From Lepidodermella squamata (lineage: Eukaryota > Animalia > Gastrotricha), in the NCBI GenBank assembly GCA_047495785.1, contig JBLDXI010000046.1, positions 1,302,001-1,366,000 on the forward strand: a DNA stretch of 64,000 nt. The letters run 5' to 3'. This document shows, piece after piece, positions 29,546 through 45,900 of this stretch; the stretch's first letter is position 1; each line of letters opens with the position of its first letter. A model generated the notes under the pieces. That model did no database searches, was not told the origin of the DNA, and worked only from the letters and a program-made list of their open reading frames with translations. The translations under genes were made by a program, and so were the position numbers.

Positions 29546-31017
29546 TCAACCATCAATCGGTCCATCAGCCGTGTGATCGGCATAATTCGGGTAAGAAGCT
29601 CGAACAACTCGATCGTTAACCGGCATAACCGCCCGATAATTGTGATCAATCAAATGGCCATCTCGCGGCCTGTGCAGGTAATGAAAATGTTCCAATTGCT
29701 CCGAGCTAACAAGCAACGGATCGGCTAGTACCAGCCACGTGATACACTGAGACAACGGCGGCGTAGTTAGCGAACCTGGATACGTGAAATATCGCTCGAG
29801 GTTTTCCGGCATTAGAGCGCGTGGATGAATGCTAAAATGCAGCGGCATTTCATGGTCGTTGTAGTCGATTTCTTTCATATCCTCAATTAGCCGCTGAACT
29901 TCAGGATGCGCAACTTCTTTAGGGTGCACCTTCAAGAAAACGCCAATCACAGCTAAGCCATCTTCGTGCCTATAGAAAATAGATGGAAAATACATATTTA
30001 TTAAATCGAAATTTGGCACTAAATTAAAATTCAATAAATTAATTACTTTAAAAATAAATTAAAAAATTAGTTAATTAATAAAATTTAATTAATTAATTAA
30101 TTATTTAAGAATTAGCCAATAAATTCCTAGTTAATTTATAGCAGATATCACTCACTTGATAGCTTCGCCCATAGTCTTGTATTTGAACTTGTTAAAATGG
30201 ACGAAATGAAGCTGAAATAATTATGAAAATTATTAGAAAATTTGCAATAAAAATTGCGATTTTACTTCAGCTGGATAGCTGTGGTTATTGATGGTATGCT
30301 CACTTCCATGAACTTTATGCGAAGGCCCCCAATGGCCATGAAATTGAACCAGCTGATATTCGTCCTTCAAAGGCCCTCCACCGATCGCTAGCAAAATTAA
30401 TTTAAAAAAAAATCAATTAAATTTGAAAAAATTACTCGCAGGAATATCTTGGCTGAAGTTGACTTGAAACGAATGGCCGCTGTTGAAAATCGTGGTCGCC
30501 TTGCAGCGTTCGTAATTGACGAGAATCGCGCCTAGACTTTCGTCATACCTGACCCATTTCGCCGTCGTATCGATGTTAATTGGACTTTGGTGAGATCCGC
30601 AGCCTTCGGGAAAAGCCTGGGCCCACGATTGCGGCCCGTGTTCGTCGTAGTCCCACTCGGTTTGACGACCCTGAGTCGACAGGAATTTTCTACTATTTTT
30701 CAAAGATAGAAGCGCCGGCAAAATTAGGAACATTTTACTCGAGACTTTTTATCATCGATTCACCTAATAAAATTGCGGTTTTTCACGGCATTGAAGCGGT
30801 TCGATACAGGTGTCGTCGAGGTTAGGACCCTGGCGATGCGGTTTTGGGACTCGTTGGCGCCACGCAAATTGCCACTTGAATGAGAAGGTAATAATTCTCA
30901 CTAGGCGAACGTTGAACTCTTATGAAATGCAAAAAATTAAATTAATTACCTGTTGCCAGGCAGCAAAGACCGCGTTGTTATGAATCGAATCAGCCGCCTT
31001 GCATTGTTCGTAAACAT
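29546..31017 (-). CDS. Alpha-carbonic anhydrase 1, with a putative mitochondrial presequence
   Basis: QSPINI, NSGHSF, QFHGHWG, SEH, ELHFVH, GSLTTPP and NYR motifs across exons. Upstream exons (31017-30950, ~30875-30764) give an Arg-rich N-terminus; the 5' structure is less certain. Confidence 0.9.
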
Positions 31018-31579
31018 AATTCCCACGGTAAAAAATCTAAATTTAACCGAAAAATGGCGTGCAAAAATGGAACTTCATTCAAGAGTAAAAAGATGAAGAT
31101 TGACGTTTCAAAGCCCTAGTTTCAGACAGTATGAGAGTGTGAGCTTTTTCCGATAGCGAAAAACAGGATAGCAACCACGTGCTATAGTGATATGAATAGT
31201 TTCCAGCTGGGATTCGCGTGCAGTTCTGATAATACCTATGAGGACTTGACTGAATTAATTACATGACCTTACATGCACCAGGAATTCATCATGCGAAGCG
31301 TGAAAACCTTATTCCTATTTTTTTATTTTATATATTATTATAAAAAGTTATAAATTATTGTAACGATAGAAAAATCTTTGATTTCGAGGATTAAAAATTC
31401 CAAAATTGAAAACCCAATTTGTCTAGTTTTACCTGATTTTTGGCGGCAATTTAAAAAATATTTTGGGCTGATCCTGGACAATTAATTAGGTCATTAGGTA
31501 ATTTAGACACTAATTTGCATATGCCACGGCCTAGATACTGACAAGATACTGACTTTGAAGAAGGGGTACTAATAAATAT

Positions 31580-32200
31580 AGGGTGCCAACTTTCATACAT
31601 AAATATGTATGAAATTTTTAACTTTCATACATATTTATGTATGACAAAATTAACTTTCATACATATTTTTTTCCATGAAATTCAAGCTGAAAACGTTAGG
31701 GAAATGCCAGATGACTAGGTTTCGGTTTATGTAAAAGAATAAGGGGGTTCCGAAAGCGAAGTCAAATTTTTCCGCATGAAAATGGTTTTTCGGGAAGCAA
31801 AAGGGCCCAAAAATCGAGATTCGTAGAAACTCGAAACTCGAACTATCCTAACCCTAACCTTGACCCTGAACCCTAACCAAATCCTAACCCTAACCCGAAC
31901 CCGAACCCGAACCCTGGCACCTAACCCTAATCCCTAACCCCAATTCCTAATCACAGTTTGGCTAAAAAACAAGATTTTATGAAAAAAAATATGTATGAAA
32001 GTTAATTTTGTCATACATAAATATGTATGAAAGTTAAAAATTTCACACATAAATATGTATGAAAGTTAAAAATTTCACACATAAATATGTATGAAAGTTA
32101 AAAATTTCACACATAAATATGTATGAAAGTTAAAAATTTCACACATAAATATGTATGAAAGTTAAAAATTTCACACATAAATATGTATGAAAGTGCACTT
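31580..32200. mobile_element. Foldback-like element: inverted arrays of a palindromic 32-bp unit around a (TAACCC)n-like core
   Basis: Left arm 31589-31680 is the reverse complement of 31975-32065. TTTCACACATAAATATGTATGAAAGTTAAAAA occurs 5 times (starts 32041, 32073, 32105, 32137, 32169; last copy truncated). Telomere-like tract at 31847-31950. Confidence 0.8.
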
Positions 32201-32596
32201 CGATAAATATATTTTTAAGTGGCGTCTACACTCCAAATTTTCCCGATTTTAAAAGTGAAATTCAGGTTGATGACGTCGATGTTTTCGTTTTATTTTCAGA
32301 CAGCTTTTAGGGGACTTTTATGTTTAGGAAATCCTGTTTTTTTACTGCTCGGCGTTGCAAAGCCAGCAAAAGTGTCCTATAGGAGGTGTCCGCGAACCCC
32401 GCGTTACGCTAGGACACAGACTTTTCAACACCTTCAAAAACTATGCCAGACCACAAGATTTATTCGGTATTATTTCTGGTCAACAAGCACAAGGTACCTA
32501 TCAAAAATACAAAATGAAAGTCGAAATATGAAACATTAAACAATGATACGGCATCGAAAATTCGAGTGAAGAACATGGTGGTGAAACGTGTTTTTT

Positions 32597-34163
32597 TCAG
32601 GGTAGGGGTAATATGCCATTTTTGCGGTAATAGTCGGCAAAAGATGCTCGAACAACGCGATCGTTAATAGGCTGAACAGGTCTGTAATTGTGATCTATCA
32701 AATGGCCATCGTCTGGGCTGTGCAAATCGTGAAAATGCGCCAGCTGCTCGTCACTCACCTCAAGCGGTTCAGCCATAACGATCCAGATGACACTCTCCGT
32801 TAAAGGCGGCGTCGTCATCGAGCCAGGATACGTGAAATAGCGAGAAAAGTCGTTAGGCAGCAAATTGATAGGATTAACGTCGAAATCAATTGCTACGTCG
32901 TGATTGTCATAGTCGATTAAATTGAAATCTTGTAGTAGATTTTGCAGCTCGGTATTTCTGTACTTCCTGTTTGCGGAAATTTTGAGAAAAACGGCGACGA
33001 CGCAAATACCATCCGGGAACTCAGCGGCTTCGTCCGCATTCAAATACTTATCGCGATTAAAGTGGACAAAGTGCATCTGAAATTAATTGAAAAATCAGTA
33101 AAAAATATTTTAAAAAATTCAAAAAATTCAAACCTCAGCCGGAAAAGAACGACCATCAATCGTGTGCTCACTCCCGTGAGAAGTATTAGATTCGCCCCAG
33201 TGAGCATGTATTTGAGCCTAAAAATCAGAAAAAAATTTAAATTTAAAATTTGAAAAATTCTCAAAAATATTCAAATTCTCCAAAAATACGGATTTTTGAT
33301 GTCTCGATATTACAGGTCAGGCCACGCGCGAGACTGCGGAGCCGATATCGATTTCAATTATCGATTTCACAAATCAGTGATTTTTCGAATTCGATTTCCA
33401 GAAAAAAAAAATTAAAATTAAAATTTATCGATAAAACCTCCAAGTACAATGAATTTGGACTCGACGTTGAAGTAAATAAATTAACAAATTTTTTGTTTAC
33501 TAACCAGTTGATATCGGTGTTGTCCTAATGGGCCGCCAAAAATCACTGAAATTGCGAGAAAAATTATTCTTCCAGCAATTTTTGTGTGTAAATATTTACG
33601 TGCAGGAGCGTTGATGTCAAATTTGACTTGAAACCCATAGCCGGTATTCCATATAGACAGCGCCTTGCATTTGTCGTAGCCGAATTTCAGCGGCGTGTGA
33701 ACGAGCGTAGCGTCGAATTGCGTCGTAAAGGCGTTCGTATCGATGTTGATCGGCGATTGGTGCGTGCCACGCCCGGCCGGGAAATAGTTGGGCCACAACT
33801 CGGGACCTTGACTCAATTTACGATAAACAGATACACGACTAGTTGTCAAACCACTCGCCGATAATCGGCGAGCATTCATTTTTTTGGCTAAAAGGTATCT
33901 TGAATTTTTTTCGCAGTGCACAAAAAATCCTAATTTGTTGTGATGACCATTTTTTTAAGGTTGATTAAAATTAATTTCCGCGCGGGGAGATTTTTATTAA
34001 TTTTTTGCTTACCATCCGTAGGCGAATATCCCCAGCAAGGTTTTTGTTTATTGTTCCGGCTGACGTGTTGATAACCCGGACGGGAACAATTCTGATCATC
34101 ATCAGCACTGACGCAACGATCAACGCCGTGTCGTCGGGCGAAAACTCCGAAAACACACGACAT
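32597..34163 (-). CDS. Alpha-carbonic anhydrase 2 (Tyr at the His64-equivalent position), 5 exons
   Basis: WGY, QSPINI, WNTGYGFQV, QIHAHWG, SEH, EMHFVH and GSMTTPP. All junctions are GT-AG and in frame. Confidence 0.92.
33310..33480 (+). repeat. Partial copy of the dispersed repeat, in a CA2 intron
   Basis: CTGCGGAGCCGATATCGATTTCAATTATCGATTTCACAAATCAGTGATT. Confidence 0.6.
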
Positions 34164-34526
34164 CGAGGATAAAAGTCCGTAAAATATTGAAAATTCAGCT
34201 GTTTTGCTGAACACTTATTGCTATTAAGATTTTCGCGTAAAAAACGAAAAGCATGTTCGCCAAAAAGTGTGTAGGAGAGGATAAGATCCGGGCCGATATA
34301 GCACGCAAGCGCGAATGTCCTCTCGAGTTTCAACATCGATTTTTTTCCTTCGAACGTGCGTAAAAAATGTCTCCTGCGGCTCGTTTTTTTTCAATAAACT
34401 CGCTTTAATGACCATAAATACAGGCAAAACATTAAATTAACAGAACGAATTTGCATAAAAACATCTCTAAAACTCTCAACAAAGCCAAATTCACGGGGTT
34501 GGAACAGCAAAGAAATAATTGTTTCT

Positions 34527-35610
34527 TCAATTTTTTTCGTCGATCGCTCGTTTAACAATGTCGCAATTTATGTAGTCCTGAAACGCCGCTCTAACAACGC
34601 GTTGATGCAGCGGTTGGACGGGCCTGAAATTGTGATCGATGTGATGCCCGCTGTGTAAATCGTGCAAATCGTGAAAATGGCTCAGTTGATCGGCGCTAAC
34701 TTCCAACGGTTCGGCAATTAAAATCCACGTGACGCACTCGGACAGCGGCGGCGTAGTCAGCGAGCCTGGGTAGGTGAAATACCGCGTTAAATCGCTAATG
34801 GGTATAAAATCGCGCGGGTGAACGCTGAAATCGAGCGGAACGTCGTGATTATCGAAGTCGATCAGTTTAAAGTCTTCAATCAAGCGCTGCAGCGTTGGGT
34901 GTTGTTTGTTGCTGGTCACCCTGAGAAAAACGCCGATAACAGCCAGGCCGTCCGGGTGTTTAGCGGCTTCGCTTACGCAGCCGTATTTTTTGTTGTAATG
35001 GACAAAATGCAGTTCGGATGGGAAAACTCGGCCGTTAACTGTGTGCTCTGAACCGTGATCGTGAGATCCGTGGCCCCAGTGTCCGTGAAACTGGGTCAAT
35101 TGGTACTCCTCATCTTGGAAAGGCCCGCCGCTCAAGACTAGGGAATTGAAAAAAATTGAAAAATTGAAATATTAAAATCGAAAATTGAAAAAATTCAATA
35201 AACTATTCAAAAATTTTTAAAACTTTAATTAAATTTAAGAAGGTCGTTTGCGTACTGGCTGGTGAATTTTCGTCGAATCGAACTTGAAATCCATGGCCTG
35301 AATTGAAAATGGACAACGCTTTGCAATGGTCGTAGTCGATAGTTAGAGGACCCAATGAGTGGTCGAACTTTGTCGATGAAGCCGTAGTATTAATGTCAAT
35401 GGGTGACTGGCGATGGCCACGGCCCTCCGGGAAGTGCATAGCCCACGAGTGTGGTCCTATGAAAAATTGAACCAACGTAAATGCGGCAAAAAATGGTACC
35501 AAAATGGACCTACCGTCTTTGCCTTCATAGCCCCATTCGTGCTTATTAGGATTTGAATGCTTATGCAAATATTTCGACATTTCCTCCTGATCTAAAGATT
35601 CCCTACTCAT
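34527..35610 (-). CDS. Alpha-carbonic anhydrase 3, cytosolic type, His-rich, 3 exons
   Basis: WGYEG, QSPIDI, NSGHGF, QFHGHWG, SEH, ELHFVH, GSLTTPP and NFRP. No signal peptide. Confidence 0.95.
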
Positions 35611-36816
35611 CGCGTATATGCACAGAGCAAAAAAATATTTTCAGAGCAGGAAAATATAACGCAAAGCGCTATACTGGCTTATTAAATATTTCAAGAGAAA
35701 AGCAATGGAAAAAATATTGGATTTTTCATTTTCCGATAGCTGCTAATCACCATTTTTTCATTTAAAAGCATCAAATGGCAGCTTTGTATGACTGAAATCA
35801 TCTCAGCATGGATAATGTGAGGAATATGATAATAGCATGCTAAAAAACTACAAATTTAATTTTTGCGGTTTTATTTATAGCTTAAAGGCGAAATATCCTC
35901 AAAATTATGTAAAATACGGCGAAAATCATGAATGCTAGAATGATTCTAGAAGAAATGGGAGACAGCCCAGGTAAGGAATACGAGCTATGATTTACAATCA
36001 CAGGTGCGCCACAATGTATGTAATGATGTAAAAAACACGATGAAAATATTGTAATGCTATAAAACGCACGGATGCGAATAAAAAGAACGCGGAAGTTTAT
36101 TGTTGCGTTCACTTTTGCGACTTCGTTATTCGATAGCTTCAAGCTATAATGAGCAGCGTTGGCTACATTCTCAACCTTATTAGAGGGAACAACTTATTTG
36201 AAAATTTTCCAGAGCTATCAGTACAGCCTAGCTAATTTAACGCGTTATAACAAGAAAATTTATGAACAGGTTAAGTTATATAGCTTCCTTATCTTAATAC
36301 ATTCAGAGAAATGCCGGTCATCAGCTGTATATAATATAAGAGGGGAAAAGTTGAGGGGTCACGTTTCAGCGACTTGTAGTTTGTTTTTTTTTCCTAAATT
36401 CAGCCTGTATTTTGAACATATTATAATATATACGTGACATTTTTACGGCCATAATAATGTTTTTTTCAATCAAAATGACGAGACATGATTTTTTAATTTT
36501 CTTTATTGCGCTAAAAAGGTAGTTTTTTCACCTATAACACATGTTCGAAGACCGGTTTACTCATTTTAATCATTATATCAACAAAAATTGCTCGATATAT
36601 AATACGCATATATTTCGCTATAAAATTAAAGAAAATTACAATCGGTATTCTCGTAAACGAGAAAAACTCGATATATATCATCCATCATGCTTGATAACAG
36701 AACGAAAGTTTTGAAAAAAACTGAAATGGTATGCAAAACTAGACAGAGAAGGAAAAGTACGAGACATTTCTTGTTATTCTCGATGCATGTTTTTCTTGCA
36801 TGAATTCGCATCCATT

Positions 36817-39049
36817 CTATTCGGAACAGGCGTTGACGTGCCGATGGTCGTTGAGTGCAAGATCGGCGGGCGGGAACGAGGCGCGAACAATGCGGCCGTT
36901 CAACGCGCACGGTAAACGGATATTATCGTCGACGCGTTCGAAGTTTGGCGTGCGGCGCATTTCACGCAACTATAATAAAATCATCAAAATTATTTGAAAA
37001 AATGATTCTTAATTTTTTTACCTCTGCTAATTGCGCGGCTGTGAAGGTTACCGGGTCGGCTGTTAACAGCCAAGTGACACACTCGTGAAGCGGTGGCGCC
37101 GTCAGCGAGCCGTCGTACGTGAAATAGCGGTCGAGTTTCTCGTGGTACATGTCTTGAGGCCGGCTGGCACTCGCCGGCATGGCAAGGTCGTACGTGCGAT
37201 AGCGAATCAGTTTGATCTGATCGATTGCGGTTTGGAACGTGGCCGCTGCTTTGCCGGGTTCGCCGATTTGCACGAAAAACCCAAGTACGGCCAAGCCATC
37301 AGGGTGGTTAATACTTTCCAGGAATGTGCCGTACTTCGCTTTATTGAAGTGGACAAAGTGAATCTAAAAAATGGAAAAATTAATTTTAAGATTGAAATTA
37401 AAATTTCAAAATAATTTTTTTTTATAATTTTGAAACTTTTAAAGAATCTTCAATTCTCAAATTAAAATTGAAATTTCAAATTTTATTAACATTTCGAATC
37501 TAAAAAATTTCATGACATTTCGAAAATTCATAAAATCGATTTTTTTTACCTCTGCTGGGTAAATTTTGTTATTCACGACGTGTTCGCAGCCGTGGCTAGC
37601 ATCATCCGCACCCCAATGTAGATGGTACTGAACGAGTTGATAGGAACCAGTCAAAGGTCCTCCACTGATTGCTGAGAAAAAAAATCGAAATTGTTTCAAA
37701 AATTACTGAAATTATTGCTAAAATTACTCGCTGGGCAGTTAGGGTCGAAATTGACCTGGAAGGCGTGGCCGTTGTTGAAAATAGTCGTGACTTTACACTT
37801 GTCGTAGTCGATTTTCAACGGTCCCAACGAAGCGTCGTGTTGCACATTCGGCGCCAGCGTGTCGATGGCAATAGGCGACTGGCGTTTGCCGTTGCCGCTC
37901 GGGAACGACTTGCACCAACTGTGTGGACCTATAGCGATTAGCACTTTCGGGAAACAATGAACATAAACGAAAAATTGCAACCATTATCACAGCCGTAGCC
38001 CCACGCCGGCGGGTCTTTCTTCAAGTTTGAACACTGGGCTCGAATTGCGGCTTCTTCGTCACGGGCCTTCTTCAATTCGGCGTCGACATCGGCCGCGGCT
38101 AGCCACGGGTCGGCGACTACTTCGCTGATTGTCACGCTCGAACGGTTTGCCAAAAGACGTTGAGTAAGTGCTGCGAAACCATTAGAGTAATTGCTAAACG
38201 AAGCATCGCTATTTGGCCTAAATTAATCATGGAATAATTGATATTTTCAACAAAAATTCAGAACATACCATTTCGATGATTCATCGTCAATATTTTCATA
38301 GGTAACACCGTTCTAGAAAAAAATGAAATTATTTTGCTGACTCGAAATTCATTTTAATCGAACCGGTAGATGCTGAGCTGCTAAATGGAATAAAAGAGCT
38401 CCGAGGGAAAAAATGTCATCCGAGGCACTTCGGGGTCTAAAATCGGAAATTAAAGTTTTTTATTTTTCCAGGTTAATTTTTCATACCGATTGGCTTGATT
38501 TTGCAAGACGCCGACTTTGATGATGCGGCGCGAGAGCGACAGGAAAACAGTCTAAAAAAATCAATAAAAATTCTAGAAAAATTCGAGAAAATAATTTTAC
38601 CTTGGCATTAAGATTCCCGTGAATAATCTCGTTATCGTGAAGGTATTTAATAGCTCGGGCAGTTTGGGCGATCCAGCTTCGAATCGTGTCTTCGGCAAAA
38701 GGTTTCGCCACTGATTTCTGCTTCGAAATCGCATGATGCAAGCTGCCGCCGTCGTGAAAATCCAGAACGGCAAACGCCTTAGTAACATCGCTGCTATCAT
38801 CCAAAATTCCAACGACTCGGACCACATTTTCATGGTTCAAATTCAAGAGTTTTTGCTTGGATTTTCCGGCCTGGAATTATAATATAAAAAAATAGGAGAA
38901 ATTTTAAATTTTTCCTATAATTTTACCTCATCAGCCGAAATTTGTTTAATGGCAAAAAGCTCGCCGTCGGTCTTCCTGCGAACGATCATAGTTCGATTGT
39001 GGTGTGGCCCATCGATATCACGCACGACAGCATAATCTCCGAATGACAT
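36817..39049 (-). CDS. NEK-like pseudokinase / alpha-carbonic anhydrase fusion, 10 exons, 542 aa
   Basis: Exons 39049-38927, 38870-38601, 38551-38487, 38436-38364, 38312-38269, 38217-37982, 37928-37728, 37671-37550, 37363-37022 and 36969-36817 total 1629 nt, all GT-AG and phase-compatible. Kinase motifs: FAIKQ, HENVV, YLH..IIHGNL, DIFSLG, DPWL. CA motifs: WGY, QSPI, NNGH, QYHLHWG, CEH, EIHFVH, GSLT. Confidence 0.85.
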
Positions 39050-42000
39050 AGTTATTTATTAAAATTCACAAACAATCCTAGATTAAAAATAGCGTTGAAT
39101 TGCGTGATGATTTTGCTCGTTAAAAAAATCCAACTCTGATGATGCGATCATGTCCTAAAAATTCGGTTCGTGACGACGAAAGGAGAGTAGACGACGACGG
39201 CTATACACTCGACGAACATCGATTTTGCGCGTGCCCGGGTAAAAAAAACGCGCATAAATCGATTGAGAGAGAAAAAACCCTCTCGCGGCTATCGAGTGGA
39301 AAAAACAGAACCACGCATGCATACGACTGACGAGATTGCAGTGGAAATAACGGCGGATTCAATTTGTCTAAAAAATGTGAAATATGAGCCGTTAGTTTGC
39401 CTTTCACAGCCAGGCAGGGTGGCTACGAGACGCGGGCTGCTGTAGAATATAATCTCGCGATAAAAAGCTAGTTGAGCTCTGAGATTTTACGACCAGACGT
39501 TTTTTAGTTACTTATCTTATATCCTTATAATATAAGGAAATAAGCCTGTCATAAACGCAAAAAAGCGGCGTTCTTGGGTGCTGGTGTGAGTGAGAAGTTG
39601 GAAGAATAATGAAAAAAACTTCTTCGACCTCAGCCTTTATACTACAGTGGCAGTGAAAAAAACGCGCATGGTGTAGAAATATAGCCTCGAGGCCATTGGC
39701 AACACGAATCATCTCAGCTAATACGTCAGTAGCTGGTGTTTGTCATTAACTTTGAGGCCGTGTCGAGTGTTCCCGGTGGTTTTTCTGATGATATAACTTG
39801 TAGATATTGTGATAAGATTGCGATGATAATGGTGATGATTAAACAACTTGTAAAAAGCATGAGTCAACTAGCCACATCATTAACGCAGGTGGAGTTTTTT
39901 TTACCCGCCCTTGAATAGGTATATATCATAGCTAAAATAGCAATGTTAAACATATTAGCGGTAGGTTATTATTCCGTGAATGATCATGTGACTGACGTAA
40001 ATGCCGTCTGGCTATGTTTGTTGTTAAACATTCTCGCTTACCACAAGAATTCTAGAAAATACTCTTTTGTGTAGTAGTACTTAACTGCATAATATGCTAA
40101 GCATCATGAGTGTAGAGGATGAACGCATAAATAATCTATTTGCCGTTCTATTTGCAGCGACGCGTGTTTATTTTTTGTGGTTTATTCATAGGCCCATGTT
40201 TTTCTTTTACTAACTTTTAACCTCAAAAGCGAGACATGATTTAATTGCATTATTAAAAATAAATGAAGGTGAAGAAAAGCCTCGGAGAAAAGGAATATTT
40301 TAACAAAACAAATCGGTGTAATTTGTTGAGGCTACCAATAAAGGGGTATGATTGAGATTCTGATCTGCAAATCAAGCTGAGTTCTATTTACGGCTGTTTC
40401 GCTTCTTTTTGAGGCTATTATCAACTGGAGACTGAACACTTCAAAATGCAAAGTTGATAAAACAGAAACGAGATATCACGTGAATTTCTAACATTTCTCA
40501 AGTCTTCGCCCTGACGATTATTAGTTTCAACAATCCTTAGAATTAGAGGCAGCCAAGAATTCACCAGCGGAGAATTATTTTCGCGACACGAAAATAAATC
40601 TGGCAATCAATTGCGGCTCTCTTTACATAGCTTATGGATTGTAGCGTTCAATTCAATTTGGCAGAAAGCACGGCGTGGACGATCTATCAGACCGATGTGC
40701 AGCTGATTTGAACCATGGGAGTGTGGAGATGGGAAAAATGGCGTCTCGCTCACTTTCTGAGCTCCTGCTTTCGTACTCCTTGCAACTGATTGAACATTGA
40801 TATCTTACAGTGAGCAAGCTAGTCAGAGAGGATTAAAACCTAGTCAATGTCACACGCCATACATTTTCCAACGACTCGGTAACGCGTCAGACTTGAAAGA
40901 ATTTAATAAGACTCCTCATCATGGTGCGATAATCCTCAGTATTTCATAAATATCTGGCAAAATCTGAGAAAGAAGATGCGGTTCTAAAATGCAAAATCTG
41001 ATCATTTTACCCGAAATCGCCTTATTTATGGCAAATCCGTGGCCAAATCAACCACCGTTTTCATAAAAATCGATCAGAATTTTCAGTTTTCAGATTAATG
41101 CAAAGAATTACACTCATAAAATATATCAAAATTGTCATTTATATTTTGAGTTTAATTTTTGTTACTGATTTTGGAATAATATGTATTTAACCTTGACATT
41201 ATTTTCAAATTTTGTTTGCGCGGCAAATGAGGTTTGCCAGTGCGTGCAGGCTGGCCTATTCGGTGTGTGTACGGAAATACTTTTGCCACCACTTGTTGAT
41301 TCCCAGAAATATGTAAATGCTGTAAATGCTAACAGATCGCGTATATCATCAAGCAGATCGTCTTCTCTTCCCTTCTAGTAGTTCTCCTATATTTGTTGCG
41401 AAGCTAAGGCTAACCAATCTCTCGTAAGCTTTTTTTTAAATCAAGTCGTCACTTGGTCTTTGTTTTATCGCGTTGTTTGTTGTGGCCCCATGGCCCTCTT
41501 ACCACTTACTTTCTCTGTTCTTGAAAGTGTTCGTTTCATTCCGCAATTTTGTACGTAATTCATCTCTGTGATCCACGCAGTCTATTGTCGATTGGGTACT
41601 GCAATATTGTCAGTTCTATTAGCTTCCATTCGAAGAGTTGTAAAAATCGCGACTGCTTTTTCACACAAAAATTATTAAGAAAAATGACTGAGAACCGTCC
41701 CTTTCATTTTGTTCTCATTGCCAGCAGAATATTGTAGTTGTAGTTGTGTGTGATGAACATCGGCATTCGGCATTCGGTAGTCAAATGAATCACTGCATGA
41801 TCTTTTGGTTTCTTGAGGATGTATTAAACAACTGTTATTGACAACTGCTCCAAATGCGAATTGTTCGCATTAAAAGTTCTCCTGTACTGGTGTTATCTCC
41901 CCTAACTAATATCTAATATTCCGTGATGTTGTCTATTTTTCAGTTTTATTAAACATGAAACGCGTGAATAGCCTGGCTACTGGCTACTCATTCAGCTGCA

Positions 42001-42978
42001 TATTATTTCATACCCGTTTTGCAAGGGGCTCCATAAGGAGAATTGATTCTTTTCTCCTCCTAAAGATATGCTAACAGTAATAAAATGTTTCAAATTAAAT
42101 TCCTCTACTCTGCATTATGCGAGATCTAATTCATGTAGTATCCTAGTTATGTTCACTCGAACTTGCCTCTTGAAAAACTCGCTCGTTTAATGTGTAGCCA
42201 GTAGTCTGTTGAGGGTTTACATGGCTATTAGATCTTTGCAAAGTCTCGTTTTCCTCCATTCTCTATAAGCGAAATACAACCATCTGCTTTACCATCACTA
42301 AAATCGAAGGATGAAAAAGCTCAGATTAGGCCTAAACCTTTGTTTTCGTGGTCGAATTTCGGGTGGCATGATTACTTTTTATGAGCAATCAGTTTTATCT
42401 GCATAGATGATTTTACTGGCTGTCATTTGAAATTTATGACGGTACATTCCAACCATCATTCCTGGGTGCTGAATTTGTTCAATAATTAGATTAGATAACA
42501 AATTTTGATGATATCTTTAGCTTGCCACGTATCAAGTTTGATAAGGAATATTCCTCAGGGCCATTTTCGCTTCATAATTCCAGGGCCTTCGATTTCTTCA
42601 GTTTTCTCTTCCGTTCTAATGCCGTAATTTCAGCAAGATGTATCGCCTTTAGATGATCCCAATTGATCTCGCTAGCTTTTTTCGCCGCCGCAGCGTAGTT
42701 TTGCATTCTACTAACGCGCTAATCTGCCGTAAAAACTTTTATCAGATCGATTTTTCCGGCACTAATTTACACAAGCATTTGTCACTGCATTGACACTAAA
42801 TGATGCATAGATCACTCCCTGAGCGCACGCAGCGCCGGAATGATCGATCACAGACACTACAATGAGCTCTGGAACTGTAGCAACATTTGATTGTCGCTCT
42901 TTTTCCGCTTCGTCACTTCCTAACAGACGACATTTGTTTGTTTTTCTTCATAGGTCTTAGCATTTTAAAGCGAATTCC

Positions 42979-45900
42979 ATGGTGCTACGACCACTTGAGT
43001 TTGTGGACTGCTTGCTGGATAGTCCTTACTTCCGCGAGAATCTTCACAACCACGAATTGGAAGTCGAGGACACCAGTAAAGCTATTAAATTGATTGTTCA
43101 ACAATGTAAATCGCTGATTGATCGAACGCGAGGTGAGTTATATTTTTTCTTCAGTCTAACACTGGCTCTGCCGTAATTTCGTTGCTTTTTATGGGGCTGT
43201 GATAACTAAATAATAGCGCGGCTCATCAGCCGACGTTTGTTTGATTGATGATCGTGAAAGCGAATAATATCGACGATCGCTTATAATATCGTGTATCTAT
43301 TAGCATGCTCACTGCGCATTATAAGCGCTTTATTCCGGCTGCGTAAGTTTACTCACGTCCAAAACCAACGTGCATCTTCTGACACGTTTATTGTTTTTTA
43401 CTCATGAGCGCTTCTGATTGCCACATCAGCGTTGGGCTGCTTTCTAGCCTTCGCTGCTGAAACAAGCGAAAATGTGTCTCAGCTGTTCGTTTTTTCTCAC
43501 CGCACAGCCGCGGTGTTGGTTGTACGCCGAAAAAAGTACTTGCCTAATTAGGCGTCCGTTGGCTGTGAAACCGTTTCGTTTCGGTTCGCAGCAGTGGGCA
43601 CTGTGCGCGCGCGAGAAAAAAACCCGCGCGCTGTCACTTTTTTGCAGCGCTGATTTATACATCAATATACCTGAGCTATTTCTTTGTGTTGAAACAAGAT
43701 TACATCATGATAATAGCCGTCAAATTGAAAGAAACACGAGATTTAATGCAAATATAACCAATTTGGACGATCTAGATTTCTGTAATTTCAGATCTATCGA
43801 AAGCCCACCGTCTGTTCGCCACGTCGCTGTCGAATTTCCAGACGCATTTCTCAGTGTTAGGCAGCGATCAAACGGACGATGAGGCGGATTTAGAGTGTTC
43901 TCTAAAGGAAATCAGCTCGTTGTTGATTCAAATCGAGGACGAGCGCGAGCAAATGTTGAGCCAGCTCGAAGAATCATTCGTCAAGCCGATGGAGCGTTTT
44001 CGTAAAACAGAAATCGGAAACGCTAAGGAAGAGAAGAAAAAATTTGACAAGCAAACGGCGAAATATTGCGCATCTCTCGAGCGATATTTGGGTGCTAAGG
44101 CTAAAAGTTTAGGAGACGATAAAATGCTTGAAGAGGTAAGAATTGATTTTGTCTGAAAAAATTCTGAAAATATTGGATTTGCGGTAAATGCCAGACGACA
44201 GATGCGCAGTTGAGACAAGATTACGCTGCTTTTGTAATGTCATCGATGAATTACGTAAAAATCGTGCAAGAAGTCCAGGAGCGGAAAAAATTCATCGTTT
44301 CAGATTGTGTTCGTTTAAAAAAGCGCATGTCTCAGCATTTGCCGTTGAAATTTTACAGCATCCAGCCTATATTAGTTACTATCGAAAAATAATATAAATA
44401 TATTGAATGATTATTAATAACCCGATTAATTTAATTTCTGTTTTTTTCTGTCTTTTCTGTGTTTTTCCGGACTAACAAACAGCTGCAGGTTGAGTACACT
44501 AGTTACCGCGAATGTGCCATGTCATATACTCAAAAAGTGCAACTAGTTCAGCTTAGCAAACGCGTCGAAATTTTGGAAGCGGTTAGTATGCAGCCTTTCT
44601 ATTATTTACATTGTTTATTTTCTTCATTAAAAGCATGCCGATTTTTCAACAATAAATGTGAAAATAATTCTATTTTTTATGTAAATTTCAGCTACTTCGA
44701 TTCATGAATCAGCAAATGGTCTTCTATCACCTTGGTTATGAAATTTTTGAAAATTTCAAACCTTACACCACATCGCTTCAGTCGAAAATTCAAAAATTGC
44801 GAGCAGCGTTTGAATCCACGACAACAGAAGCCGAAAATCTGAAGCGAAAAATGCTTCTGGTATAGCTAAAAATTCCGAAAAATTATCGATAAAGTTGAAT
44901 TTTTCAGAATCCAAAAGAGTACATGAGAACTTCTCAGTACAAAGGCTCGACGCTAACCGGTTATTTGTTGGTGATGAAAAAGCAGAGTTTGTTCAATTTT
45001 TGGAAATTTTAAGGCGGAATTTTTTATTTTTTTTTTCGTTTTATTTTTTAGAAGCCGCTGTGTTGAATGCGGTGTGGTCGAAGCATTTTTGCGAATATTC
45101 CAAAGACAACCGGGTGTTTAAAATGGTTCAGTACAGCCAGTCGAACGGGTTGCCGAAAATGTTGCAAAACATGGAGCCATTTATTATGAAGAGCTGCATT
45201 CGAATCGGCGCGGAACTTTACGACCGCCGATTTTGTTTCACGGTCGCGCTTGAAGATTCACAGCAGAAGCAAACGCAACTCGTGCTTCAAGCGCCTGACG
45301 ATAACGAACTGCGTCTATGGCTCGATGCTATGGAGGGCAAAGAACCGATTGAACAAGCGATTTCTGTGATGGCTGCTTCGCAAGGAACTTGTAAGAAATC
45401 TTAAAATTTCAGAATTTCCGCAAACTTTTTTATACTTAATTTAGACCGCATTTCCAAAGAGGGACATCGTTTCATCCAGCAGTGTATAAACGCTGTCGAA
45501 AGTCGAGGACTAACCGAAGCAGGTCTTTATCGAGTTGTTGGTTTGACTTCAAAAGTTGACAAACTGCTATCAATTGGCATCGGTTTGTTTCGATCCAGCT
45601 TAAAATTAATTGTAATTGAATTTTTTAATATAGAAAAAGACATCAGCGTTGAATTGATGGATCCTGAAACTGATCTGAAAGTGATAACCAGCGCTATAAA
45701 GCAATATTTCCGGCGGTTAAACGAGCCTCTAATGACATTTGAGCTTCATTCTGGTCTCATTCAAGCAGCAAGTAGGAATTTTCATTAACAAATTTATTTT
45801 CACTTAATATTTTTCTAATTTTTTCAGAGCAAGATTCGCCCCAAAAACGAGCATCAGCCGTTCACGTTTTAGTTCACCGCCTTCCTGAGCCGAATTTCGT

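What the first reader, a model, noticed from the sequence alone, without database searches (positions are those of the whole stretch)
36817..39049. Pseudokinase-carbonic anhydrase fusion gene
Seen: ten phase-compatible exons give one 542-aa ORF. The kinase C-terminus (RSSVTISEVVADPWL), a helical linker (DAELKKARDEEAAIRAQ) and the CA start (WGYGCDNG) all lie in a single stop-free exon (38217-37982), so the fusion does not depend on a guessed long splice. The CA half keeps the three Zn-binding His (QYHLHWG, EIHFVH) and the equivalents of His64, Glu106 and Thr199, so it should be active. Known: alpha-CA domains are fused to receptor phosphatases (PTPRG/PTPRZ1), where they are extracellular and inactive; I know of no described cytosolic kinase-fold-CA fusion. 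Inference: a scaffold or allosteric module that localises or gates CO2/pH catalysis, or couples CO2/bicarbonate sensing to signalling (NEKs are often ciliary or centrosomal).
Basis: partly seen in the sequence, partly recalled or inferred. Interest (0 to 1): 0.92.

Follow-up and report, generated by a model that had tools for sequence, protein, structure and literature searches.

The report
Dead kinase fused to carbonic anhydrase
One expressed animal gene joins a catalytically dead, NEK-like kinase domain to an apparently active carbonic anhydrase; two other organisms carry the matching enzyme type, one of them showing the whole fusion, and no paper found here describes this arrangement, whose role is still unknown.

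Summary
On the minus strand, 39049-36817, ten exons give one 542-aa ORF. All nine introns appear as GT..AG spliced joints in the contigs of a cDNA run, and one 325-nt contig runs from the end of exon 2 into the linker in exon 6.

- **No separate CA product:** kinase end, linker and CA start share exon 6. An in-frame stop lies just upstream of the ATG. No in-frame ATG lies between codons 22 and 439.
- **N-terminal half:** it is a kinase fold (Pfam Pkinase 3e-12; best solved match NEK1). It lacks the HRD and DFG aspartates, the catalytic Asn, the Gly-loop and most of the activation segment.
- **CA half:** it is CA II/XIII-like with His94, His96, His119, His64, Glu106 and Thr199 intact.
- **Conservation:** a distant relative in metagenome contigs carries the same architecture with kinase-like domain, linker and CA start in a single exon. 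Its N-domain also best matches NEK1.
- **Phylogeny:** the fusion-type CAs form a clade (99/98). It is sister to three CA-only paralogs that lie in tandem just downstream.
- **Selection:** polymorphism suggests purifying selection on both halves, stronger on CA, from small counts.

Function is inferred: an active cytosolic CA with a non-catalytic targeting or regulatory domain. Database and literature searches found no description. The scan also noted this same stretch once before (s1-405038).

The parts
36817..39049 (-). Coding region of the pseudokinase-CA fusion gene: 10 exons, 542 aa plus stop.
   Evidence: ORF assembly. All 9 introns seen as spliced joints in cDNA contigs.
38097..39049 (-). 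Pseudokinase domain, aa 1-232, exons 1-5 and the start of exon 6. It keeps the beta3 Lys (FAIK) and the alphaF motif DIFSLG. It has HGNLNAKT in place of HRDxKxxN and KVGVLQ in place of the DFG motif. The Gly-loop is degenerate. Only about 11 residues stand where the activation segment and APE motif should be.
   Evidence: Pfam Pkinase 3.2e-12 on exon 2. NEK1 is the best solved match, E 4.6e-8. Motifs read.
38004..38096 (-). Charged linker of about 31 aa (aa 233-263), probably helical, inside exon 6. It has a conserved Cys (C254) and the pattern K-x-P-x-x-W-G.
   Evidence: Sequence. Alignment with the relative. The low-confidence model of the relative shows a helix here.
36871..38003 (-). Alpha-carbonic anhydrase domain, aa 264-525, from the end of exon 6 to exon 10. 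Zn ligands His94, His96 and His119, the proton shuttle His64, and Glu106 and Thr199 are all present.
   Evidence: Pfam Carb_anhydrase on exons 7-9. Alignments to CA II and CA XIII.
36820..36870 (-). C-terminal tail of 17 aa ending in Cys-Ser-Glu-COOH. All three fusion-type CAs share this ending; the CA-only paralogs lack it.
37982..38217 (-). Exon 6, the junction exon: kinase C-terminus, linker and CA start in one stop-free exon.
   Evidence: Bounded by joints 38217|38269 and 37928|37982 in cDNA contigs. A 325-nt contig runs from 38081 through exons 5, 4 and 3 into the end of exon 2.
39050..39079 (-). Short 5' UTR behind a TAG splice acceptor. The cDNA contig continues upstream with 23 letters found nowhere in the window, probably a trans-spliced leader.
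   Evidence: loose end at 39079. (no match in the window). Earlier notes on trans-splicing in this genome.
36500..36816 (-). 3' UTR. cDNA depth falls off between about 36520 and 36410.
   Evidence: table 2, and the loose end at 36570.
34527..35610 (-). CA-only paralog 1, next gene downstream on the same strand. It has its own ATG and shares the intron site after the DPNxPA motif.
32597..33921 (-). CA-only paralog 2. Tyr stands at the His64 position. The start coordinate is approximate.
29546..30733 (-). CA-only paralog 3.

Best explanation
This is one genuine, expressed, evolutionarily retained gene for a soluble protein of about 60 kDa. No signal peptide or membrane span is visible in the sequence.

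The C-terminal half is a CA II/XIII-type alpha-carbonic anhydrase with every catalytic residue in place. It is expected to hydrate CO2 at a high rate.

The N-terminal half descends from a NEK-like Ser/Thr kinase. It has lost the catalytic Asp, the Mg-binding Asp, the catalytic Asn, the Gly-rich loop, part of helix C and nearly the whole activation segment. It therefore cannot phosphorylate and probably does not bind ATP.

A short, probably helical linker inside one exon joins the two halves, so the CA can only be made as part of the fusion.

Inferred: the dead kinase fold acts as a non-catalytic module. It may dock the enzyme to a partner or a place in the cell, or control it, and so give one member of a four-gene CA cluster a specialised role. 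The fusion predates the split between this animal and a distant relative.
For: Shown:
- **Gene model:** all nine splice joints are in cDNA contigs, at similar k-mer depth (about 450-650) across the kinase and CA exons. A 325-nt contig links exons 2 to 6.
- **Translation:** an in-frame stop lies three codons upstream of the ATG. No in-frame ATG lies between codons 22 and 439.
- **Domains:** Pfam hits to both domains. NEK1 is the top solved match for the window N-domain (4.6e-8). It is also the only significant solved match for the relative's N-domain (0.0014).
- **Active site:** CA residues aligned to CA II and CA XIII.
- **Conservation:** the relative on L004/L005/L003 has N-domain, linker and CA start in a single ORF, with its one intron at the site of window intron 7. 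The N-domains alone align at E 9e-10.
- **Phylogeny:** the fusion-type CAs form a clade (99/98) sister to the CA-only paralogs (96/90).
- **Selection on CA:** 14 synonymous to 0 nonsynonymous differences in this species and 11 to 0 in the relative.
- **Selection on the N-domain:** 6 to 4 in this species and 5 to 2 (N-domain plus linker) in the relative. The pooled 11 to 6 gives p = 6e-4 against an assumed neutral 75% nonsynonymous.
Against: - No activity, binding or localisation data exist.
- The structure model of the relative's N-domain was poor (pLDDT 42.5), so the kinase fold of the C-lobe and any interface with the CA are unconfirmed.
- The N-domain is only about 24% identical between the two taxa, and its polymorphism includes nonsynonymous changes, so constraint on it is modest.
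- The polymorphism counts are small. 16 further variants were not listed by the reads tool.
- Contigs cannot exclude a minor transcript that starts inside the gene.
- Only three taxa are known, one of them seen for the CA half alone.
Confidence: 0.7

Rival explanations
1. Two neighbouring genes, a kinase and a CA, have been wrongly joined, or are joined only in read-through or polycistronic RNA. The CA would be made on its own.
For: The genome trans-splices and has operon-like clusters. Three CA-only genes lie just downstream. Contigs cannot prove one molecule.
Against: The junction lies inside a single exon with an open frame. No in-frame ATG occurs from codon 22 to 439. A cDNA contig runs from exon 2 to the linker. 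The relative has the same join in one uninterrupted ORF.
Confidence: 0.03
2. The N-terminal domain is a decaying relic with no function of its own. Only the CA matters, and the leader is merely tolerated.
For: All kinase catalytic motifs are lost. The N-domain is 24% identical between taxa against 49% for the CA. It carries 4 nonsynonymous differences against 0 in the CA.
Against: An open frame of about 230 codons is kept over a divergence of about one substitution per CA site. Pooled differences are 11 synonymous to 6 nonsynonymous, p = 6e-4. Motifs are conserved: DGGSL, F-x-E-D-x-I-x-x-W, TVF, SLG and the P-W/F-L-A motif at the domain's end.
Confidence: 0.12
3. The N-domain is an atypical but active kinase or nucleotide-binding sensor that signals in response to CO2, bicarbonate or pH produced next to it.
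For: The beta3 Lys is retained. Some kinases work with unusual motifs. Known pseudokinase-enzyme fusions such as receptor guanylyl cyclases and RNase L use nucleotide binding (background knowledge).
Against: HRD Asp, catalytic Asn, DFG Asp, the Gly-loop and the substrate-binding activation segment are all missing. The relative lacks even the His of the catalytic loop.
Confidence: 0.1

Closest known systems
Cytosolic alpha-carbonic anhydrases CA II and CA XIII
   Same: These are the best solved matches for all CA exons. The motifs NNGHAFQV, QYHLHWG, EIHFVH and SLTxPP match, the Zn ligands and proton shuttle are present, and there is no signal peptide.
   Different: This protein carries an N-terminal extension of about 263 aa (pseudokinase plus linker). 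It has clade-specific cysteines at C254, C268 and C366 and a C-terminal Cys-Ser-Glu. Thr200 is replaced by Ala.
NEK family Ser/Thr kinases (NEK1), including the catalytically dead NEKs that are abundant in Giardia (from memory)
   Same: NEK1 is the top solved match for both the window and the relative N-domains. The FxEDxIxxWxxQ...HD motif around helix E is shared.
   Different: There are no catalytic residues, helix C is truncated, the activation segment is deleted, there is no NEK C-terminal coiled coil or other tail, and the domain is fused to an enzyme. NEK membership rests on weak scores (36 and 21 bits).
Receptor tyrosine phosphatases PTPRG and PTPRZ1
   Same: They are the only well-known fusion of an alpha-CA domain with a phospho-signalling domain.
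   Different: The logic is reversed. There the CA-like domain is dead, extracellular and ligand-binding, and the phosphatase is live. Here the CA looks live and cytosolic, and the kinase is dead.
Pseudokinase-enzyme fusions: receptor guanylyl cyclases (kinase-homology domain, helix, cyclase) and RNase L / IRE1 (from memory)
   Same: The order is a dead or regulatory kinase fold, then a helical linker, then a catalytic domain. In those systems the kinase fold controls the enzyme allosterically or by dimerisation. Mouse GC-D works with CA II in CO2 sensing.
   Different: The downstream enzyme is a CA, which is normally an unregulated monomer. There is no receptor or membrane part. Nucleotide binding is unlikely. 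No homology beyond the kinase fold was shown.
Slob / PXK pseudokinase-like proteins
   Same: They are the nearest clusters by language-model features for the relative's N-domain (score 0.91). They are non-catalytic kinase folds that modulate ion channels or pumps.
   Different: This is a lead only, with no alignment or E-value. The solved-structure searches point to NEK1 instead.

Membership tests
Alpha-carbonic anhydrase (Pfam PF00194) | Domain match above the curated cut-off over the whole domain | tested here: met
   Exons 7, 8 and 9 score 44.5, 42.6 and 94 bits against a cut-off of 27 and cover profile positions 3-218 of 254. Exon 10 aligns with the CA C-terminus in relatives.
Alpha-carbonic anhydrase (Pfam PF00194) | Three Zn-binding His (94, 96, 119) | tested here: met
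   HLHWG and IHFVH align to CA XIII and CA II.
Alpha-carbonic anhydrase (Pfam PF00194) | Catalytic Glu106 and Thr199 and the proton shuttle His64 | tested here: met
   GCEH, SLTAPP and NNGHAFQV align to CA II and CA XIII. The relative on L004 has Asn at position 64.
Alpha-carbonic anhydrase (Pfam PF00194) | CO2 hydration activity | not testable with these tools
   Needs an enzyme assay.
Protein kinase superfamily (Pfam PF00069) | Domain match above the curated cut-off | tested here: met
   Exon 2 scores 46.9 bits against a cut-off of 31.7, E 3.2e-12. The relative's N-domain scores only 15-16 bits, below the cut-off.
Active protein kinase | HRD Asp, catalytic Asn, DFG Asp, Gly-rich loop and an activation segment with APE | tested here: not met
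   HGNLNAKT, KVGVLQ and DGPHHNRT are found in their place. About 11 residues lie between the DFG position and helix F. It is therefore a pseudokinase.
NEK kinase family | Closest to NEKs rather than to other kinase families | tested here: inconclusive
   NEK1 is the top solved match for the window (36.4 bits against 32.3 for the next family). It is the only significant match for the relative. No kinome-wide tree was made.
Single fused gene (Rosetta-stone fusion) | One transcript and one ORF across both domains | tested here: met
   Spliced cDNA contigs support every junction, the domain junction lies inside exon 6, and there is no internal ATG. A single full-length molecule was not seen.
Single fused gene (Rosetta-stone fusion) | The same architecture in another lineage | tested here: met
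   L004/L005 carry a 343-aa ORF holding N-domain, linker and CA start, followed by the rest of the CA.

The most novel reading that the evidence does not exclude
The dead NEK-like domain is an allosteric or dimerising switch for the attached carbonic anhydrase, or a docking module that places it beside a transporter or sensory structure. That would be the first case of a carbonic anhydrase regulated in cis by a kinase fold. It would define a small new family of signalling-type CAs in a group of microscopic invertebrates. The clade-specific cysteines (C254, C268, C366 and the C-terminal Cys-Ser-Glu) might be part of such a switch.
Probability: 0.2. Interest if true: 0.8.

Novelty: new variant of a known kind. 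Interest (0 to 1): 0.62.

Why it matters
Alpha-carbonic anhydrases are usually treated as fast, constitutive, stand-alone enzymes. The one familiar fusion to signalling domains, PTPRG/PTPRZ1, carries a dead CA. Here a live-looking CA is tied to a dead kinase fold, and the join has been kept across a deep divergence. This suggests that CO2/bicarbonate/pH catalysis can be targeted or controlled through a pseudokinase.

It also gives a clean natural experiment. Three CA-only paralogs lie next to the fused gene, so the effect of the extra domain can be compared within one genome. For pseudokinase biology, it adds an unusually compact example, with the activation segment deleted, attached to a readily assayed enzyme.

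Tried and rejected
- **Exhaustive protein search with exon 9:** the top 150 were mostly multi-CA proteins. None carried a kinase-like N-terminus (Pfam on 10 of them; phmmer of the N-domain against all 150). It did yield the fragments P0006 and P0011, which led to the relatives.
- **Word-index searches:** exon 6 found nothing. The relative's 343-aa ORF and alignment A2 found only that ORF itself. The window's own protein is therefore apparently absent from that collection, and the family is rare.
- **JGI metagenome scan with the CA start:** it returned only GC-rich loci with the CA alone.
- **AlphaFold2 on the relative's ORF with a 5-row alignment:** pLDDT 42.5. The order of secondary structure fits a kinase N-lobe, but the model is too poor to use, so no fold search was run.
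- **Profile alignments of exon pieces (A1, A3, A5):** these misaligned and were dropped. A profile search of solved structures with A2 was swamped by CA hits.
- **Other blanks:** Rfam found nothing in the window. The 23-letter 5' extension is not in the window. The atlas search of a neighbouring gene gave no taxon for the relative. Six literature searches found no kinase-CA fusion.

Full report
**1. What is there**

Reading the minus strand from 39400 to 36500 and translating all frames gives ten stop-free pieces. They join through GT..AG introns of 49-56 nt, plus one of 186 nt, into a 1629-nt coding sequence of 542 codons plus a stop. The exons are 39049-38927, 38870-38601, 38551-38487, 38436-38364, 38312-38269, 38217-37982, 37928-37728, 37671-37550, 37363-37022 and 36969-36817. 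A TAA lies in frame three codons upstream of the ATG, so the ORF cannot start earlier.

**2. Is it transcribed as one unit?**

Two public runs hold the stretch. Laid on 36300-39600, they behave differently.

- **Run X2** covers exons and introns alike. It is DNA of a strain or haplotype about 2-3% different from the window.
- **Run X1** is cDNA. Its contigs skip exactly the nine predicted introns (all CT..AC on the plus strand). Its depth in the long intron is 1.4, against roughly 220-2250 in exon-containing bins. Its loose ends carry what I recognise from memory as a SMART-type cDNA primer.

One 325-nt X1 contig runs from 38081, in the linker, through exons 5, 4 and 3 into the end of exon 2. 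The contigs that cross the other junctions have similar k-mer depths (about 450-650). The contig chain breaks inside exon 6 only at heterozygous sites (38022, 38076, 38080), where both alleles are assembled.

The junction between the two domains lies inside exon 6 with an open frame. The protein has Met only at positions 1, 21, 440, 450 and 496, so the CA cannot be started separately at an AUG. Contigs cannot prove single molecules, and that remains to be shown with long reads.

The 5' contig ends at a TAG acceptor (39079/39078), 29 nt before the ATG. It then continues with 23 letters that occur nowhere in the window. Other notes of this scan report spliced-leader trans-splicing in this genome, so this is probably the leader.

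**3. The two halves**

Pfam on single exons gave Pkinase 3.2e-12 for exon 2 (profile positions 52-122). It gave Carb_anhydrase 1.9e-11, 7.5e-11 and 1.5e-26 for exons 7, 8 and 9 (profile positions 3-218).

*The kinase half* (aa 1-232), read:
- It keeps the beta3 lysine (FAIK), the helix-E region and the helix-F motif DIFSLG.
- It has HGNLNAKT where active kinases have HRDxKxxN, and KVGVLQ where they have the DFG motif.
- The Gly-loop is degenerate (DGPHHNRT).
- Only about 19 residues separate the beta3 Lys from beta4, which implies a truncated helix C.
- Only about 11 residues stand where the activation segment, the substrate-binding P+1 loop and the APE motif should be.

It is therefore a compact pseudokinase that very probably cannot phosphorylate. 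Its best solved match is NEK1 (E 4.6e-8), ahead of a MAP2K-like protein and ULK1/2.

*The CA half* (aa 264-525) best matches cytosolic CA II and CA XIII. The alignments place:
- NNGHAFQV, giving Asn62 and His64;
- QYHLHWG, giving Gln92, His94 and His96;
- GCEH, giving Glu106;
- EIHFVH, giving Glu117 and His119;
- SLTAPP, giving Leu198 and Thr199, with Thr200 replaced by Ala.

Nothing needed for catalysis is missing. No signal peptide or hydrophobic span is visible in the sequence, so the protein should be soluble and intracellular. This last point is a reading of the sequence, not a computed prediction.

**4. Relatives**

An exhaustive search with exon 9 gave mostly multi-domain CAs. None of the 150 best hits had a kinase-like N-terminus. 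The two closest single-domain hits were fragments from raw assemblies, and their contigs were decisive.

- **L001** (Logan contig, 998 bp, 56% GC) encodes a CA that is 67% and 50% identical over its two aligned segments. It begins exactly at WGY, at the contig end, and finishes with NACSE, like the window protein's ACSE.
- **L004/L005/L003/L002** (metagenome assemblies of one species, 38% GC) carry a 343-aa ORF starting at an ATG. It contains a kinase-like domain, a helical linker and the CA start (WGFGCTNGP...FQVNFDPNARA). A single 64-nt intron follows, at the position of window intron 7, and then the rest of the CA, ending in PCSE. The spliced relative is 523 aa.

Compared with the window protein, the relative is 24% identical in the N-domain, 29% in the linker and 49% in the CA. 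The N-domains alone align with E 9e-10. The relative's N-domain misses the Pfam cut-off (E 0.006). Its only significant solved match is again NEK1 (E 0.0014), which independently supports a NEK-like origin. The relative lacks the kinase catalytic motifs too, so the domain was probably already dead in the common ancestor.

**5. Genomic context and history**

Three further alpha-CA genes lie just downstream on the same strand, at 35610-34527, about 33900-32597 and 30733-29546. Each is CA-only and starts on its own. They share intron sites with the CA half of the fusion.

In a maximum-likelihood tree with 19 outgroup CAs:
- The three fusion-type CAs (window, L001, L004) form a clade with 99/98 support.
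- The three paralogs form a clade with 99/97 support.
- The two clades are sisters with 96/90 support.

The fusion-type lineage is therefore older than the split from the L004 organism.

Fusion-type CAs share features that the paralogs lack: Cys at the WGYGC and GCEH positions, a linker Cys, the C-terminal Cys-Ser-Glu, Tyr93, and Ala or Gly at position 200.

**6. Selection**

Synonymous (S) and nonsynonymous (N) differences:

| Comparison | N-domain | Linker | CA |
|---|---|---|---|
| Window against the X2/X1 variants | 6 S, 4 N | 1 S, 2 N | 14 S, 0 N |
| Among the L004-species contigs | 5 S, 2 N (linker included) | counted with N-domain | 11 S, 0 N |

Pooled, the N-domain shows 11 S to 6 N. 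If 75% of random changes were nonsynonymous, so few would be unlikely (binomial p = 6e-4). The numbers are small, and 16 variants were not listed by the reads tool. Even so, they argue that the dead kinase domain is under purifying selection, weaker than on the CA.

**7. How it most likely works**

Shown: a real, expressed, conserved gene; a CA with a complete active site; a kinase fold without catalytic equipment; covalent linkage through a short charged linker.

Inferred: the pseudokinase is a non-catalytic module that localises, scaffolds or regulates the CA. This would give one member of a CA gene cluster a specialised role. I rate a targeting or scaffold role as most likely, cis-regulation (allosteric, by dimerisation or by redox) as possible, and real kinase or nucleotide-sensor activity as unlikely.

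A structure would help, but the only model I could make was too poor to use (the relative's ORF with a 5-row alignment, pLDDT 42.5).

**8. Comparison with what is known**

- The CA half is an ordinary member of the alpha-CA family.
- The N-half is a member of the kinase superfamily and fails the test for an active kinase. NEK membership is suggested but not established.
- The known CA fusion with signalling enzymes, PTPRG/PTPRZ1, has the opposite logic: a dead extracellular CA and a live phosphatase.
- In layout, the closest analogues are pseudokinase-helix-enzyme proteins such as receptor guanylyl cyclases and RNase L. This comparison is from memory.
- Six full-text searches found no kinase-CA fusion.
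- The large protein collections held no full-length member.

I could not query InterPro architectures, so I cannot exclude scattered unremarked predictions elsewhere.

**9. Verdict**

The structural reading (a pseudokinase fused to an active-looking CA, with no dependence on a guessed splice) is supported and strengthened by cDNA and by a distant relative. The functional ideas remain untested.

This is a new domain architecture built from two well-known domains and known from three taxa, only two of them shown to carry the N-domain. I rate it a new variant of a known kind, of moderate to high interest. The same stretch was noted once more by this scan (s1-405038).

Noticed in passing
window 29546-35610, minus strand: Three CA-only alpha-carbonic anhydrase genes lie in tandem directly downstream of the fusion gene. 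They share its intron sites and form the sister clade of the fusion-type CAs. Paralog 2 has Tyr at the His64 position.
   Followed up: partly
window 39050-39079, minus strand: The cDNA contig ends at a TAG acceptor 29 nt before the ATG. It continues with 23 letters (minus-strand reading TCTGCGAATTTGATTTGTGTCTA) that are absent from the whole window. This is probably the spliced leader of this animal. It does not match the rotifer or nematode leaders I recall from memory.
   Followed up: partly
window protein aa 254, 268, 366 and 540; same positions in L004; last three in L001: Four cysteines, including a C-terminal Cys-Ser-Glu-COOH, are conserved in all fusion-type CAs and absent from the CA-only paralogs. 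They may form a redox or metal site. Their role is unexplained.
   Followed up: no
window 37822-38080 in run X1: The cDNA run carries two alleles or haplotypes of the gene. About one third of the depth has the X2-type variants, so both copies are expressed.
   Followed up: no
window 39100-43400: About 4 kb upstream of the gene holds no ORF of 70 aa or more on either strand. The part laid (up to 39600) has almost no cDNA depth. The next gene, from about 43850 on the plus strand, points away from the fusion gene.
   Followed up: no
L004:1883-1946 and L001 about 349-407: The relatives have far fewer introns in this gene (one each in the parts seen) than the window gene (nine). The L004 intron sits at the site of window intron 7 and the L001 intron at the site of window intron 8.
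   Followed up: partly
L002:5768-6556, minus strand: A guanylate-cyclase-domain gene lies a few kb from the fusion gene in the relative's contig. It was not examined.
   Followed up: no
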